The notes under the pieces are model-generated. The model saw only the letters and a list, made by a program, of their open reading frames with translations, made no database searches and had not been told where the DNA came from. Made by a program: the position numbers and the translations under genes. A stretch of DNA of 64,000 bases from Selaginella moellendorffii (Eukaryota; Plantae; Lycopodiophyta), in contig NW_003314315.1 of assembly GCF_000143415.4 (NCBI RefSeq), positions 310,001 through 374,000 of the forward strand. The letters are read 5' to 3'. Of the stretch, positions 18,634 through 46,541 are shown one piece after another (positions within the stretch are counted from its first letter, which is position 1; each line of letters begins with the position of its first letter).

Positions 18634-19335
18634 ATGGGGCGGCCGTCTGTGTTTGTGGTGATATTCATCATTGTAGCTCACATTATCTCTTTCGCGATGT
18701 CTCTTGGGGCGGAGACTCGACGAACAAAGGTAAACCTCTCGCGCTCTCTCCGAGAGATTTTTCATTGCGAGTCTTCCAGGTAGTTTGGGAGTATGATCCC
18801 AATAACCAGTACTACTATTGCAAATACAAGCTAGACATCGCTAGTGGTCTCGCTGGAGCGGCCTTTGTATTTAATCTCCTCTCGTTTCTGTTGATCATGG
18901 GAATGACCAAGTGCTACTGCTGTGCCGGTCCTCACAAGCCCAGTGGAAATCGATTCTGTGCACTCCTCTCCTTTTTTCTCCTCATGTAAGTAGCTTTGGA
19001 GCTTTTCATTCCAGCTTTGATTTTCTCTTCGTTGTTCTTGCAGAATCGTGTTTATAATTGCCGAGGCTTGCCTTCTCGCCGGTGTCAACCGCAACCAAAT
19101 GAGAACAAAGACGATATACTTCCAGGGGCAAAACGTTCCCGACTGTGAGACTATAAGCAAAGGCATCTTCTCGGCGGCGGCGGCGTTTACGTTCTTCTGC
19201 CTGATACTGAGCTTATCCTACTACGTTTCAGCCGCAAAGTCGGAAGATAGCTATCCGCTGCCTCCGCGGCCACCGTCGGTCGGGATGACAATGTTTCCCC
19301 AGCAGCCATCCGGCCCGAGTCCCTATGCCTTGTAA
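18634..19335 (+). CDS. DUF1218 / fiber protein Fb34-like four-TM membrane protein, 3 exons
   Basis: LGAETRRTK / YYYCKYKLDIASGLAGAAF / FIIAEACLLAG / CETISKGIFSAAAAF. Confidence 0.88.
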
Positions 19336-19438
19336 GCTCCCGCTTTTCACGACGACGACGAACTCCGGGACTTCTTCTTTCAACTTTCCTGGAAGCGATC
19401 GGTCACACGAAGTAAGTTTTTTTTTTTTTTTTCCTCTC

Positions 19439-19972
19439 TTATGGACAAAACGTGATAATGTAATCGCCACCGCTTGGACAGGGAACCAATTTCGGATGGC
19501 AATAGTGGTTGCGACACTGGATAGACTTACACCCGGCAGCGGTCGGGGAGATGGCGAGGGGGACGCTCCCGCGAGAGAACCTGATACCATAAAAGTCGGT
19601 GTCTCCGGAGTGGCCGGAATTGAGCTGGAACTCGGCTATACTGGATGGAAGAAGGTTGGTAATGTAGAAACTTCCCGAGAGAGCTGCGGTGGATTCAACA
19701 GGGACCTGTCCGGTGCCTCCAGCCTCGAGCGTGAAGACGTTCCTCAGCGCCGTGTGGTCTCCTTCCATATGCATCTGGACGTTGAGAGTGAAGTCGCAGT
19801 TATTCCTCGTCTGGAATGTGGTCTGGAAAGTCACAGCTGATCAGAGCAGGACAACGATCGTTAGAACCATAGATCTGCAGGTGGAAGGGGAAAAAGCAAG
19901 GCCCGCAAACAAACCGTGAACTGGGATCGTCGAAAAGAGCAGTAGCAGCAGCGAAGCTATGATCTTCTTCAT
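19439..19972 (-). CDS. Small secreted thaumatin-like (PR-5) protein, 2 exons
   Basis: Signal peptide MKKIIASLLLLLFS; TRNNCDFT, IAEFQLN, TDFYGI, C-terminal CPSGGDYIITFCP. Confidence 0.82.
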
Positions 19973-21969
19973 CTTGGTCGGGGGCAAAATCACGCACGCA
20001 GCAAAGCTCCGGCTTATGAATCGCGGCCCGGGGAGAAATCACACAAAGTAATCGGATGTAAACATGGTTTTCCAGGAGAGCTTGAGTGGATATCCAGGAG
20101 TCCAGATAGCTTTCACGAGGAACAACAGAGCTCCCACTATGGCGACACTTGGAAGAGTGTCAGAGGTGGTATATTGCGATCCAAAACTCCACTATCGTCA
20201 CTAAATCAAATAGAATCGGCATATTCCATATTCTATTTCCCGCATAAACCCTAGAAAGAAAATTTTGTGGACTGGAGGCGGACAAGGTGCTGCACTTGGT
20301 GAAGCACTGCTGCTACTGGATTTGCCGCCATCGTTCTCCATGAGAATCGCGAGCGCGCGAGGTTTTCACTTTGGGCCGATGTTCCGCGGCATAATCCGTG
20401 ATGAAGAGCATTTTGGAGGAAAAAATTTGTTTGATTGATACGAGTGAAGATGCTGCTCCCCAGTGACTGGTTTCTTCATTACGAAGGTTTTTTCTTTTCT
20501 TCTTTCCTTCTTGATTTTCATTTTAACTTCTTACAGGTTATAGTAATGCGATGAGATTCCCAACACTCTTTGATGATTTACTCGACCATCTTCCTCTCTG
20601 CTGCAGACACTGCTTTTGCTACGACAGATATGACTCCGTCGCTAGGCTCTAATATGAACGAACGCGGGAAAGATTAGAAAGCTTTTAGGCTAAGAGACTT
20701 ACCATGCCGTTTAATCACGGCCTTCTTCCCATCTTCGAAAGTGGTGAAGATCGTGTAAGGAGCTAGATTCTTATCAAACTCAGTTTCTAACTGCATAAGC
20801 ATATGATCAGAAAACATTGAATACCAGAAATATACCTCTGCCGGATCTGTATGCTTCACAAAGATTTCCAGAGAGACTTACGCTTTAGAAACATAAAAAG
20901 CGGTGAAGGGTCCACTCAAGAAAGGGCTACACTCGTTTACCCAGACTTCTAAAGCGTTCTGGTGCAGAGGCAAAGATTTGACTTCGTTAAACCTGGACGA
21001 GGTGATCATCCGCGTATGTTTACTGTGCTTTGTGCAGTCTATAGCTCTTGAGAAGGCTCTGAAAGAGTCTTACGATGGACTTCTACTAGGAGAGCTTATA
21101 TAGCCTTTTTAGTAAATCTTCTCCTCCACCAATCTGTTAATAACACTCGTCCTGATGGGACAGGATTTAGTCAGTGGAAATTCATCGTGAGTCTTATGTT
21201 CGGCTGTCAGGAGTCACAAGATTTCCTAGATTATTACTTCGTAGACTTACAGGACGTTGATTTGCAGCCACTAAGGACTCGGACACGGCTTTTTGTCAAG
21301 GTAAATTCACTCTAGCAGCTCTGACTAAACTAGACATGGCTATGCCAGTCTAGTTTCTGGAAGTCATCAAAGCAGGGACTCAAGAACAACGAGTCAGATG
21401 TTGCTCTTGATGATTCCTCGTGGTTCTCAGCCGACAATTTCTTTTGGTTGCTCTTGAAGGTAACTACATTTTTACATGTGTCACGTTTTTCTCATCTATA
21501 CCTGGCAGGACTCATAGCTACAAAAACGGCTGGGATCCTGGCTGTGTTCATTGTGTTTCATGAACACGGCCATGGGTCGTGTTCCCATGGCTGTGTTCAT
21601 GAACAATATATACTATTACAAACACAGGCCATGATCCCGGGCCGTAAACACCAACTTAGGGCACATGCAACAATCTAGAGTGCACCACACATGGTGCAGC
21701 AATCTAGCATACTGTAGGGATAAAGCATCCTTTTTCATGGTGGTGGAATGAGGTAAGTGTGCTTGAGAGCAAGGTTTGGTCATGCAAATATTGCACAATG
21801 GTGAACAAGCTCAATGACATTGATCATGTGTGAGGTAATATGTTTGGAGAAGGCTTAAGCAGCAAGGATATTGTGCATTGCCCCTTTATCCTAAGGTAAC
21901 AAGAAGATAAAACTGGTTAATGTGAAAAAGGTTATTGACTCTGAAAAAGGTAGAAGGGGGAAGAAATAG

Positions 21970-44472: not shown

Positions 44473-44509
44473 AAACCCTAATTCTTCCTCTAAGTTAGGG
44501 CTAGGGTTT
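44473..44509. promoter_or_regulatory. Telo-boxes upstream of RPS5
   Basis: aaaccctaa and tagggttt within about 50 nt of the ATG, typical of plant ribosomal protein promoters. Confidence 0.6.
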
Positions 44510-44523
44510 GTGTTAGGTTTTCC

Positions 44524-45367
44524 ATGGCGGCGACAACTGAGGCTGTGGCTGTGGAGAAGCCCGCCGCCTCGTCCGATGTCAAGCTCTTCAATGCCTGGAG
44601 CTACGAGGATATTGAGGTAAGCGCTGGATCCATCGATCCATTAGCTCTGATTTTGGCTCTAGATTCACGACATTTCACTCCACGACTACATTGCGTCGCG
44701 GCGCGCTACCTATGTGCCGCACACCGCCGGCCGCTACTCCAAGAAGCGGTTTAGGAAGGCGCAGTGCCCCATTGTCGAGAGGTACGCGATCAAAATCTCT
44801 CCTTTGGATAGTTTTCTCTCCATTTTTTTCAGGCTTACGAACTCTTTGATGATGCACGGGAGGAACAATGGAAAGAAGTTGATGGCTGGGCGCATTGTGA
44901 AGCACGCGATGGAGATCATTCACTTGCTCACAGATGCGAATCCGATCCAAATCATCGTGGACGCCATCATCAACAGGTAGAGCTATAGATCTCTTTGTTA
45001 CAACTTCATTGATTTTTCGTCCTTCCTGCTTGCAGTGGTCCTCGTGAAGATGCTACACGAATCGGTTCCGCTGGTGTGGTGAGGCGTCAGGCTGTTGATA
45101 TCTCGCCTCTGCGGCGCGTGAATCAAGCCATTTACTTGCTCACTACTGGAGCTCGCGAGAGTGCTTTCCGAAACATCAAGACCATCGCCGAGTGCCTCGC
45201 TGACGAGCTCATGAATGCCGCCAAGGGATCTTCCAACAGGTACCTTGCGGCCAGAAATTCTTTCTCTCGCCTCAAGCTCTAAAGTTCCTTGTTTTTGTTT
45301 TTGATGTTTCAGCTATGCGATCAAGAAAAAGGACGAGATTGAGCGTGTTGCGAAGGCGAATCGTTGA
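44524..45367 (+). CDS. RPS5: 40S ribosomal protein S5 (uS7), 5 exons
   Basis: [67 protein letters not shown]. Confidence 0.98.
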
Positions 45368-46541
45368 GAAACACATTCTAATGTATTGAGCCTTTTTTGG
45401 CATATCTTTTGAAATCAAAGATTCTACTACACATTTGATCCAAACTTTCGAAAGTATCAAGTTCTTGTTTCAGAGTTCTCTTTTTTGTTGATGTTTAGAC
45501 TATTCGATGAAAGAAAAGAATTCAAATCTACGATTGCAAAAGCATTTTGTTCCATGGCATTCGAATTCGAGGCTTCAGACCGTCCTAACCATGTTCCACA
45601 GGAAAAAAAGATTTTTCGGAACAATGAATCGATCAGATTTGGCTTCTTGGCATCACTAGCCTCGCAAAGCAATCGCCCAAAACAGTGGATGGCCTCAGAA
45701 CGATGTTAACAGCACTAGAAATCAGACATATGCTTGTCAATGTTTTCGATCATCACAGGCCTTTCCAGAGAGAAAGAAACGAGGAAGAACAAGTCAGAGT
45801 CAGACTTTCAAAGCGAATCCTCAATCCAAATTCAGACAGGGATAACTGTGTCATTGAGAATCATCATCCTCGCTCCGCTAGCTAAGAAAAATCAACCTCG
45901 CCGCAGAGAGACTCACAACTTTAGGGTTCTTCGGCAGCCCTAAACGTTGCTTTACATGGAAATGGACGGCTACGATCGCATGAGCTAAATTTAAATTTCA
46001 GCGCCCGGTCCGCAAAATTTTGAATTTTAAAAAGCAGAAAACATTGCGACGTTTAGCCGGATTGGAATGTGAGCCCGCGTCCGGGTTTGAAATTTTTCAA
46101 AGGCTCCAAGGATCTGCCGCCACGTGGAGAATTACCGCCGGTGGTGTAAAAGAGGCCTTTGGTGGGAATCACCTGTTTGTAATTGGACGGTGGCGATCTG
46201 CGGACAGGGCGATTCCCGCCGTCGATCCTAGGGCTTGGCCAGATTAGGGCTCCCAAATTTCAAATCGATTTAAAAGAGGAGGAGTAGTACTGTAAGATCG
46301 GTAGGGTTTGCGGTCGCAGCGGGAGAAGCTGCTGCGCTCTAGTCGTCTAAGGCGCCGTGGATCCGCTGGGGAAGCGCAGCGCTGCCAATAGGCGATTCGA
46401 TTGGCGCTGATGAAGCAGTGGATTCTTCCCGTGGCGAGGTGAGCTGCTGGTTTTGCTGTGGAATTTGGCGACCAAATTCGTGGGATTTCTAGGAACACCT
46501 ATCTCTCCCTGAGTCTCCGGCTGGGTTAATTGGCTTGATTG

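What the first reader, a model, noticed from the sequence alone, without database searches (positions are those of the whole stretch)
18900..46121. Tandem segmental duplication with a readable junction and reciprocal gene loss
Seen: at 39388-39414 the sequence tttcaaaggctccaagaatctgccgcc (one mismatch to 46095-46121, upstream of ALY) is fused directly to ggaatgaccaagtgct (18900, inside Fb34). Inference: this is the junction of a head-to-tail duplication of an ancestral Fb34(part)-TLP-AAR2-RING-CH-RPS5-ALY-promoter unit. Copy 1 kept Fb34 and TLP. It lost AAR2 and RING-CH as pseudogenes, and RPS5 is not found there. Copy 2 kept AAR2, RING-CH and RPS5 and lost TLP, while its Fb34 was truncated at birth. 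Exactly one intact copy of each gene survives, and all recognised TE insertions landed in the dead half of copy 1.
Basis: partly seen in the sequence, partly recalled or inferred. Interest (0 to 1): 0.75.

Follow-up and report, generated by a model that had tools for sequence, protein, structure and literature searches.

The report
Old tandem five-gene duplication, spikemoss
A 6.7-kb stretch holding five neighbouring genes was copied head-to-tail in the spikemoss Selaginella moellendorffii, the join is still readable, and most genes then decayed in one copy or the other; this is a clean example of an ordinary process.

Summary
Bases 39388-39414 match 46095-46121 at 26 of 27 and occur nowhere else in the window. 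They are followed directly by sequence matching 18900 onward, inside exon 2 of the Fb34/DUF1218 gene.

Self-comparison gives a collinear chain: copy 1 is 18900-39414 (20.5 kb) and copy 2 is 39415-46121 (6.7 kb). Substitution divergence is about 5-11%, with many small deletions, so this is neither allelic nor an assembly artefact.

The N gap (27715-27814) lies inside copy-1-only DNA. No homologous block or reading frame crosses it, and continuity across it cannot be tested here.

- Fb34 and the small thaumatin-like gene are intact only in copy 1.
- AAR2 and RPS5 are intact only in copy 2.

Two points need correcting. A 155-bp RPS5 remnant does survive in copy 1. RING-CH in copy 1 is not a long-dead pseudogene: exons 2-7 are intact, dN/dS is 0.17, and there are no frameshifts while its introns are full of indels. 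Its only lesions are an early stop with a frameshift in exon 1 and one lost splice donor.

Transposon origin of the 16 kb of copy-1-only DNA is likely but unproven. The scan has already noted many similar duplications elsewhere in this genome.

The parts
18634..19335 (+). Fb34/DUF1218 gene, intact. Exons 18634-18729, 18780-18985 and 19044-19335. The left breakpoint of the duplication (18899|18900) lies in exon 2.
   Evidence: Pfam DUF1218 positions 1-41 and 45-94 of 95. Exons link through GT-AG introns of 50 and 58 nt with an open frame and a TAA stop.
18900..39414 (+). Copy 1 of the duplicated unit (20.5 kb), inflated by three copy-1-only blocks.
   Evidence: Collinear chain in self-BLAST.
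19439..19972 (-). Small thaumatin-like gene (TLP), intact, 151 codons. Exon 1 is 19972-19915 and exon 2 is 19836-19439.
   Evidence: The model matches RefSeq XP_024543336.1 (P0002, 151 aa, S. moellendorffii). Thaumatin similarity: Pfam 25.2 bits, just under the 27.4 cutoff; PDB thaumatins at E about 2e-5.
20261..21512 (+). AAR2 pseudogene of copy 1. It has many deletions and two stops in aligned codons, and its last exons are missing (no counterpart of 42064-42482).
   Evidence: 91 of 341 aligned codons fall in gaps, with 2 stops and dN/dS 0.52. 40 gaps are missing from copy 1 against 10 missing from copy 2.
20568..20869 (-). 302-bp segment of the AAR2 pseudogene that is inverted relative to copy 2 (40955-41324).
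   Evidence: BLAST minus-strand block. Clean breakpoints with only a 5-bp inverted microhomology.
21513..30415 (.). Copy-1-only block 1 (8.9 kb, 31-41% GC), replacing 419 bp of the unit. It contains the N gap at 27715-27814, flanked on the right by a purine-rich simple repeat.
   Evidence: No match to copy 2. Gap and flanks. A hAT-like lead for 28040-28297 (Atlas 0.90). No Pfam hit.
30458..31697 (-). RING-CH (RINGv + DUF3675) gene, copy 1. Exons are 31697-31430, 31377-31306, 31209-31142, 31066-30925, 30857-30777, 30718-30629 and 30565-30458. Lesions: a TAA at codon 17, net +1 indels in exon 1, and the intron-6 donor changed from GT to CT. A downstream ATG at 31630 is in frame with the RING.
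   Evidence: Alignment with frames, coordinates, dN/dS 0.17 over 221 codons, indel and binomial tests, DUF3675 hit for copy-1 exon 4.
31698..31932 (.). Remnant of the shared RING-CH/RPS5 divergent promoter region in copy 1.
   Evidence: 90% identical to 43935-44298 over aligned bases.
31933..34109 (.). Copy-1-only block 2 (2.2 kb), replacing RPS5 exons 1-2 and most of exon 3. It contains a 44-bp tandem repeat at 32702-32799.
   Evidence: No match to copy 2, tandem repeat, no Pfam hit.
34110..34545 (+). RPS5 remnant (34110-34263: end of exon 3, intron 3, start of exon 4) and 3'-flank remnant (34270-34545). Both are heavily C>T decayed.
   Evidence: BLAST blocks. K2P 0.27-0.30 with 71 GC>AT against 5 AT>GC changes. 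61 of 94 substitutions are C>T or G>A, and 63% of CpG cytosines are changed.
34546..39387 (.). Copy-1-only block 3 (4.8 kb, about 30-33% GC, with a (TA)34 run at 35898-35966).
   Evidence: No match to copy 2. Integrase_H2C2 lead for 37887-38153 (Atlas 0.95), but no Pfam, PDB or word-search hit.
39388..39414 (+). End of unit in copy 1: a 27-mer equal to 46095-46121 at 26/27. The junction is 39414|39415.
   Evidence: No microhomology and no terminal inverted repeats at the breakpoints.
39415..46121 (+). Copy 2 of the duplicated unit (6.7 kb), compact and without large insertions.
39415..39712 (+). Fb34 fragment of copy 2. It lacks exon 1 and the first 120 bp of exon 2 from birth. It was then hit by 11 deletions (1-86 bp; the 86-bp one removes the intron with 9 and 19 bp of its flanking exons) and stops.
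   Evidence: Alignment. All 11 gaps are missing from copy 2.
39790..40271 (-). TLP pseudogene of copy 2. The start codon is changed from ATG to ATA (40271-40269), with frameshifting deletions of about 19 and 30 bp in exon 2 and a deletion in the signal peptide.
   Evidence: Direct reading of both minus strands. 18 of 131 exon-2 codons fall in gaps.
40508..42310 (+). AAR2 gene of copy 2, intact as far as tested (exon cores 40508-42011, with likely last exons up to about 42310).
   Evidence: Pfam AAR2_1st positions 2-22, 20-49 and 89-131; AAR2 C-terminal region positions 26-58 and 57-82. All ten exon cores link in frame through GT-AG introns of 40-62 nt.
42526..43934 (-). RING-CH gene of copy 2, intact, with seven exons: 43934-43668, 43570-43499, 43363-43293, 43146-43005, 42930-42850, 42791-42702 and 42633-42526.
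   Evidence: All six introns are GT-AG. RINGv positions 1-25 and 25-47; DUF3675 positions 29-72, 73-99 and 100-119 on successive exons.
44524..45367 (+). RPS5 (uS7) gene of copy 2, intact, five exons.
   Evidence: Pfam Ribosomal_S7. Exons link through GT-AG introns of 46-73 nt, with a TGA stop.
46095..46121 (+). End of unit in copy 2. The right breakpoint is 46121|46122, upstream of the DIRP-domain (ALWAYS EARLY-like) gene.
   Evidence: DIRP domain at 47673-48799.

Best explanation
An ancestral segment of about 6.7 kb was duplicated once, in direct tandem, by a non-homologous join. The segment ran from the 3' part of Fb34 through TLP, AAR2, RING-CH and RPS5 to the spacer upstream of ALY. The duplication fused the unit's end (now 39414) to its start (now 39415). 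The left breakpoint cut Fb34 exon 2, so the second Fb34 copy was born truncated.

The two copies then decayed in complementary ways (shown). Copy 1 kept Fb34 and TLP. It lost AAR2 through small deletions, a 302-bp inversion and loss of the 3' exons, and lost nearly all of RPS5. It also took up about 16 kb of extra DNA in three blocks. Copy 2 stayed compact, kept AAR2, RING-CH and RPS5, and lost TLP.

RING-CH is the exception (shown). Both copies were held under purifying selection for most of the time since the duplication. Copy 1 has only recent-looking lesions at its two ends.

Inferred steps: dead copies shrink by a deletion bias. The transposon-flanked distal part of copy 1 has undergone methylation-type C>T decay. 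The surviving genes restore the ancestral gene order, with about 20 kb of dead DNA between TLP and AAR2.
For: Junction and collinear chain. The copies differ by 5-11% in substitutions, with 133 indels, so they are not alleles or assembly duplicates. The two haplotype alleles of TLP differ by only 2 residues and one 3-codon indel. There are no terminal inverted repeats and no microhomology at the breakpoints. Introns are retained in both copies, so this is not a retrocopy.

Intact models: Fb34, TLP and RPS5 (TLP equals RefSeq XP_024543336.1), AAR2, RING-CH copy 2. Dead copies.

Deletion bias towards the dead copy: Fb34 fragment 11:0, AAR2 pseudogene 40:10.

RING-CH copy 1: dS 0.20, dN 0.033, ratio 0.17. 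Nonsynonymous changes are 0.375 of all changes, against at least 0.56-0.62 expected if copy 1 had been neutral from birth (P = 0.0005-0.016). There is 1 in-frame indel in exons 2-7 against 20 in the introns (P = 7e-8).

Same age for the strongly diverged RPS5 remnant: once C>T and G>A changes are removed, 33 of about 405 sites differ (8%), as in the other blocks.
Against: The left side of the junction is only 27 bp, and the flank upstream of it shows no significant further homology. The scaffold join across the N gap, which connects the Fb34/TLP/AAR2-pseudogene half of copy 1 to the rest, cannot be verified from the sequence. TLP shows no sign of constraint between the copies (ratio about 1 on 14 differences). 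The Fb34 fragment, dead from birth, gives a low ratio (0.15 on 15 differences), which warns that NG86 ratios here are noisy or biased downward. Synonymous divergence varies between genes (0.03-0.20), so local gene conversion or rate differences cannot be excluded.
Confidence: 0.85

Rival explanations
1. Complete reciprocal loss: RING-CH copy 1 is a plain pseudogene and exactly one working copy of every gene remains.
For: Copy 1 has a TAA at codon 17 of exon 1, a net +1 frameshift in exon 1, and a GT>CT change at the intron-6 donor. That change would replace the well-conserved 35-codon last exon by 12 read-through codons. No protein of 68-217 aa matching its exon-1 ORF was found, though the length filter makes that blank weak.
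Against: Exons 2-7 are open with six of seven splice junction pairs intact. dN/dS is 0.17, and there are no frameshifting indels where about 15-20 would be expected at the intron rate. Death at or soon after the duplication is therefore rejected. At most it is a very recent loss. The ATG at 31630 restores an open frame into the RING domain.
Confidence: 0.5
2. RING-CH copy 1 is still a working paralogue with remodelled ends, so the locus shows partial fractionation plus one retained duplicate.
For: There are strong signs of purifying selection on copy 1. It keeps the 235-bp promoter-side remnant at 90% identity. An in-frame alternative start was created by the same 13-bp insertion that breaks the old frame. 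A comparable frameshift-plus-new-start case has been described for SmMADS21 in this genome (PMC3442193, section 11).
Against: Loss of the intron-6 donor removes an exon that has the lowest dN/dS of all (0.06). There is an upstream 16-codon ORF. No expression data are available here.
Confidence: 0.35
3. Assembly artefact: the two copies are the two haplotypes, or a collapsed or mis-joined repeat placed in tandem by the assembler.
For: The published assembly holds both haplotypes (PMC3442193). One scaffold gap lies inside copy 1.
Against: Divergence is 5-11% with 133 indels, a 302-bp inversion, 16 kb of copy-specific DNA and complementary gene decay. This is far beyond the allelic difference seen for TLP. 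The junction lies in gap-free sequence 11.6 kb from the gap.
Confidence: 0.02
4. Not a simple tandem event: copy 2 was inserted by transposon-mediated capture or by a separate dispersed duplication, and the 27-mer match is incidental.
For: The window has other mosaics of duplicated gene fragments upstream (10.8-17.7 kb).
Against: The end of copy 1 matches the end of copy 2 exactly where a tandem event predicts, and the 27-mer is unique in the window. There are no terminal inverted repeats or direct repeats at the unit ends. The unit carries five genes with their introns and spacers.
Confidence: 0.04

Closest known systems
Local multi-gene segmental duplication in S. moellendorffii: SmMADS20/21 with PEBP and kiwellin-like genes (Gramzow et al. 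2012, PMC3442193, section 11)
   Same: Same genome. A block of at least 5 kb holding three neighbouring genes was copied about 20 kb away. One member (PEBP) became a pseudogene in one copy, and one gene acquired a new N-terminus after a frameshift.
   Different: Here the unit has five genes, the two copies abut, and the junction can be read to the base. Losses fall on both copies, and divergence is higher (about 7% against about 3-5% at the protein level there).
Fractionation / reciprocal gene loss after duplication (established for whole-genome duplicates in yeasts and plants; from general knowledge, not tested here)
   Same: Redundant copies are lost from either duplicate, so that single-copy genes return to one copy. 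The dosage-sensitive housekeeping genes (RPS5, AAR2) are back to one copy.
   Different: The scale is a 6.7-kb tandem unit within one locus, not a genome. One of the losses (Fb34) was imposed by the breakpoint rather than by later decay. With only three free genes the left/right pattern has no statistical weight.
Other local duplications noted by this scan in the same genome (s1-368730 'duplicate then abridge'; s1-420843 haplotype-specific tandem repeat; s1-380595 junction chimera)
   Same: Tandem or local copies of neighbouring genes, eroded by small deletions, with breakpoints that cut genes. The deletion spectrum here also has many 8-12 bp events (30 of 133).
   Different: Those are on other DNA. 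This locus adds a base-resolved junction, complementary losses, and one duplicate kept under selection.

Membership tests
Direct tandem segmental duplication | Two paralogous blocks, same orientation, adjacent, collinear | tested here: met
   Nine collinear blocks on the plus strand and one internal 302-bp inversion.
Direct tandem segmental duplication | Junction where the unit end abuts the unit start, with unique flanks outside | tested here: met
   39388-39414 equals 46095-46121 and 39415 onward equals 18900 onward. Sequence before 18900 and after 46121 has no counterpart at the junction.
Direct tandem segmental duplication | Real in the organism (supported by reads or a second assembly) | not testable with these tools
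The only indirect support is divergence far above the allelic level.
Reciprocal (complementary) gene loss between duplicates | Each copy retains at least one gene that the other has lost | tested here: met
   Copy 1 alone has intact Fb34 and TLP. Copy 2 alone has intact AAR2 and RPS5.
Reciprocal (complementary) gene loss between duplicates | Every duplicated gene is back to exactly one working copy | tested here: inconclusive
   RING-CH copy 1 has end lesions but a selected, open core. There are no expression data.
Processed retrocopy | Loss of introns, poly(A) tail, single gene | tested here: not met
   Introns are kept in the RING-CH, AAR2 and RPS5 remnants. The 86-bp deletion in the Fb34 fragment overshoots the intron by 9 and 19 bp.
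Transposon-mediated gene capture (Pack-MULE or Helitron type) | Terminal inverted repeats, target-site duplication or Helitron termini at the ends of the copied block | tested here: not met
   No inverted match of 8 bp or more between the unit ends. The only direct matches are the homologous ones.
RINGv + DUF3675 (plant RING-CH/MARCH-like) E3 ligases | Complete RINGv domain followed by DUF3675 | tested here: met
   Copy 2: RINGv positions 1-25 and 25-47; DUF3675 positions 29-72, 73-99 and 100-119 on successive exons. Copy 1 exon 4 also hits DUF3675. The exons were searched one at a time.
Thaumatin family (for the 'TLP' label) | Pfam Thaumatin at or above the gathering score | tested here: not met
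   25.2 bits against a cutoff of 27.4, over a partial match. PDB thaumatins match at E about 2e-5, with matches at the N-terminal, central and C-terminal motifs. It is best called a short, divergent thaumatin-like protein.

The most novel reading that the evidence does not exclude
RING-CH copy 1 is a living duplicate whose N-terminus was rewritten by a stop plus a 13-bp insertion that brings a formerly out-of-frame ATG into frame, and whose tail was swapped by loss of a splice donor. That would be a caught-in-the-act case of a duplicated E3 ligase changing both ends while its catalytic and membrane core stays under selection. Alongside it, the transposon-flanked part of the same dead copy shows a roughly fourfold, CpG-centred C>T excess. 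This gives a within-locus measure of how silencing-linked decay spreads in a lycophyte.
Probability: 0.3. Interest if true: 0.4.

Novelty: new member of a known kind. Interest (0 to 1): 0.25.

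Why it matters
This is a tidy, base-resolved example of how a compact plant genome without whole-genome duplication makes and then prunes local gene copies. The breakpoints, the blunt junction, the deletion bias of dead copies and the order of losses can all be read from one locus. It shows that duplication followed by complementary loss can restore the old gene order while leaving about 20 kb of new spacer where extra DNA accumulates.

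It corrects two annotation points: a hidden RPS5 remnant, and a RING-CH duplicate that was selected for a long time. It does not open a new question. Such duplications are already described in this genome (PMC3442193), and the scan has met many of them.

Tried and rejected
1. Extending the junction homology upstream of the 27-mer. The best local alignment (39320-39350 against 46014-46043) is collinear but not significant.

3. Proving transposon identity of the copy-1-only blocks. There were no long terminal repeats or inverted repeats, no Pfam hits for 20 ORFs even at E up to 10, no PDB hits and no word-search hit. Only Atlas leads remain: hAT-like at 0.90 and Integrase_H2C2 at 0.95.

4. Finding an annotated protein for RING-CH copy 1 with its exon-1 ORF. 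The search was blank within the tool's length window, which is uninformative.

5. Rfam and tRNA scans of 17-48 kb found nothing.

6. A retrocopy reading of the intron-less Fb34 fragment was rejected, because the 86-bp deletion is imprecise.

Exons were searched singly by reference. Neighbouring exons were joined only inside scripts, to test frame continuity.

9. PMC3166216 (the genome paper as I recalled its id) is not held, so statements about the assembly rest on PMC3442193.

Full report
OBSERVATION. Bases 39388-39414 equal 46095-46121 at 26 of 27 positions. Base 39415 begins an exact 16-base match to 18900-18915. After an 11-bp deletion in the second copy, the match continues. The 27-mer occurs only at these two places in the window at up to three mismatches; none was expected in shuffled sequence.

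A self-comparison of the window gives a collinear, same-strand chain from 18900-21512 and 30416-34545 onto 39415-45734, closed by the 27-mer pair. This defines copy 1 as 18900-39414 (20.5 kb) and copy 2 as 39415-46121 (6.7 kb). One 302-bp piece (20568-20869) is inverted relative to 40955-41324. Sequence before 18900 and after 46121 has no counterpart at the junction, and the breakpoints share no microhomology or terminal inverted repeats. That is the signature of a single direct tandem duplication closed by a blunt, non-homologous join. Upstream of the 27-mer I found no further significant homology, so on that side the junction rests on 27 bases plus their exact collinear position.

THE GAP. 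The only N run is 27715-27814. It lies in the middle of an 8.9-kb block (21513-30415) that exists only in copy 1. Its right flank is an ~80-bp purine-rich simple repeat, a likely cause of a sequencing gap. No homologous block and no reading frame of interest crosses it. Whether the two sides are continuous, and how long the gap really is, cannot be tested from the sequence.

Two things limit the damage. First, the blocks on the left end opposite 42063 and those on the right start opposite 42483, in the order and orientation that copy 2 predicts. Second, the junction, RING-CH copy 1, the RPS5 remnant and all of copy 2 lie on one gap-free stretch.

ORGANISM AND GENES. I confirmed this: the thaumatin-like gene model I built (exon 1 19972-19915, exon 2 19836-19439, 151 codons) is RefSeq XP_024543336.1 of that species. 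A 97%-identical 148-residue allele, XP_024541948.1, sits on another scaffold of 1.46 Mb, evidently the other haplotype.

Pfam, run on single exons by reference, identifies the following:
- DUF1218 (the 'Fb34' gene)
- a sub-threshold Thaumatin match, backed by PDB thaumatins at E about 2e-5
- the AAR2 N- and C-terminal domains
- RINGv followed by DUF3675
- Ribosomal_S7 (RPS5/uS7)
- downstream, a DIRP domain, so 'ALY' is an ALWAYS EARLY/LIN-9-type gene

INTACT COPIES. All exon sets below link in frame through canonical GT-AG introns of 40-73 nt, the short introns usual for this genome.
- Fb34 (18634-19335).
- TLP (19439-19972).
- AAR2 (40508 to at least 42011, probably to about 42310).
- RING-CH copy 2 (42526-43934, seven exons).
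- RPS5 (44524-45367, five exons).

Neighbouring exons were joined only inside scripts, to test frame continuity.

DEAD COPIES.
- Fb34 piece of copy 2 (39415-39712). It starts in the middle of exon 2, so it was truncated at birth. It has since taken eleven deletions of 1-86 bp and stops. The 86-bp deletion removes the intron with 9 and 19 bp of its flanking exons, so it is not a retrocopy.
- TLP of copy 2. It has ATA instead of the start ATG (40271-40269), a deletion in the signal peptide, and frameshifting deletions of about 19 and 30 bp.
- AAR2 of copy 1 (20261-21512). It has lost 91 of 341 aligned codons to gaps, has stops, carries the 302-bp inversion and lacks the last exons.
- RPS5 in copy 1. 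A remnant of the end of exon 3, intron 3 and the start of exon 4 survives at 34110-34263, and the 3' flank survives at 34270-34545. The rest was deleted or replaced by copy-1-only DNA.

In every dead gene the missing bases are in the dead copy: 11 to 0 for the Fb34 piece and 40 to 10 for the AAR2 pseudogene. This is a clear deletion bias.

RING-CH IS THE EXCEPTION. The copy-1 gene (30458-31697) has three kinds of lesion:
- a TAA at codon 17
- indels in exon 1 that sum to +1
- a GT>CT change at the donor of intron 6

Everything else is intact. Exons 2-7 are open, the other eleven splice sites are canonical, and exon 4 still scores as DUF3675. Over 221 codons, dS is 0.20, dN is 0.033 and the ratio is 0.17.

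If copy 1 had drifted neutrally since the duplication, at least 56-62% of the differences should be nonsynonymous, even with copy 2 perfectly constrained. The observed share is 37.5% (P between 0.0005 and 0.016). The share is also lower than in the three genes with one dead copy (Fisher P about 0.01-0.02).

The indel contrast is stronger still. There are 20 indel events in 578 nt of intron against a single in-frame 3-bp event in 564 nt of exons 2-7 (P about 7e-8). So copy 1 was kept by selection for most of its life. It is either a very young pseudogene or still coding with altered ends. The 13-bp insertion that breaks the old frame also brings an ATG at 31630 into frame with the RING domain. 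Against present function, the lost donor would cut off the last exon, which is the most constrained of all (ratio 0.06). I put 'now dead' at about 0.5-0.6 and 'still working' at about 0.35.

Cautions: the ratios are noisy. The born-dead Fb34 fragment gives 0.15 on only 15 differences, and TLP gives about 1 on 14.

AGE AND HETEROGENEITY. Substitution-only divergence is 5-11% in nearly all blocks. This is far above the allelic difference seen for TLP, so the event should predate the split of the two haplotypes.

The RPS5 remnant and its flank look much older (K2P 0.27-0.30), but 61 of the 94 substitutions there are C>T or G>A towards copy 1. These changes hit 63% of CpG cytosines against 17-38% in other contexts. 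The remaining changes amount to about 8%, as in the other blocks. The remnant is therefore the same age as the rest, with an added methylation-type decay. This fits its position inside a 30-35% GC tract.

COPY-1-ONLY DNA. Three blocks add about 16 kb: 21513-30415, 31933-34109 and 34546-39387. Copy 2 has no large insertion. There are no long terminal repeats, no Pfam, PDB or word-search hits, and only two language-model leads: hAT-like at 28040-28297 and an integrase zinc-binding domain at 37887-38153. Transposon origin is likely but unproven.

COMPARISON AND VERDICT. The same genome already has a described case of a multi-gene block copied nearby, with one member turned into a pseudogene and one gene given a new start by a frameshift (PMC3442193, section 11). 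That paper also cites the view that this genome had no whole-genome duplication and lists accession numbers for two haplotypes. The scan itself has logged many local duplications on other DNA of this genome.

What it adds is a junction read to the base, complementary losses on both copies, a hidden RPS5 remnant, and a RING-CH duplicate that selection kept for a long time. With only three genes free to be lost from either copy, the neat left/right pattern carries no statistical weight.

Noticed in passing
window 10800-17700: A mosaic of repeated gene fragments lies upstream of the duplication. Pieces of a cation-efflux (CDF/MTP-type) exon and of the neighbouring RBBP4/MSI-type WD40 gene recur three to four times at 70-97% identity (for example 13112-13325 against 17487-17702 at 91%). 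The intact WD40 gene is at about 16683-18371 (-) and the cation-efflux gene at about 9800-11800 (-).
   Followed up: partly
window 34110-34545 (and the 30-35% GC tract 33000-39360): The copy-1 remnant of RPS5 shows a one-sided C>T/G>A excess: 61 of 94 substitutions, with 63% of CpG cytosines changed. Other substitution types are at the locus-wide 8%. This looks like methylation-linked deamination spreading over the insertion-rich part of the dead copy.
   Followed up: partly
window 20568-20869: A clean 302-bp inversion lies inside the AAR2 pseudogene. Its breakpoints share only a 5-bp inverted microhomology.
   Followed up: yes
window 1-497 vs 9241-9837: Another diverged direct repeat (75% identity over about 600 bp) near the start of the window. 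It was not examined.
   Followed up: no
window 19439-19972 and P0001/P0002: The 151-residue thaumatin-like protein has only its own allele as a relative in the word-based search of 72-229-residue proteins. The allele differs by a 3-codon in-frame deletion in a short internal repeat, which is also altered in the copy-2 pseudogene.
   Followed up: partly
window 50233-52677 (-): A long intron-free 814-codon ORF with the look of a pentatricopeptide-repeat protein. It contains internal nucleotide repeats (51330-52506).
   Followed up: no
window 32702-32799: A 44-bp unit repeated 2.2 times at 98% identity, inside the GC-rich part of copy-1-only block 2. Long ORFs overlap it on both strands, with no family match.
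   Followed up: no
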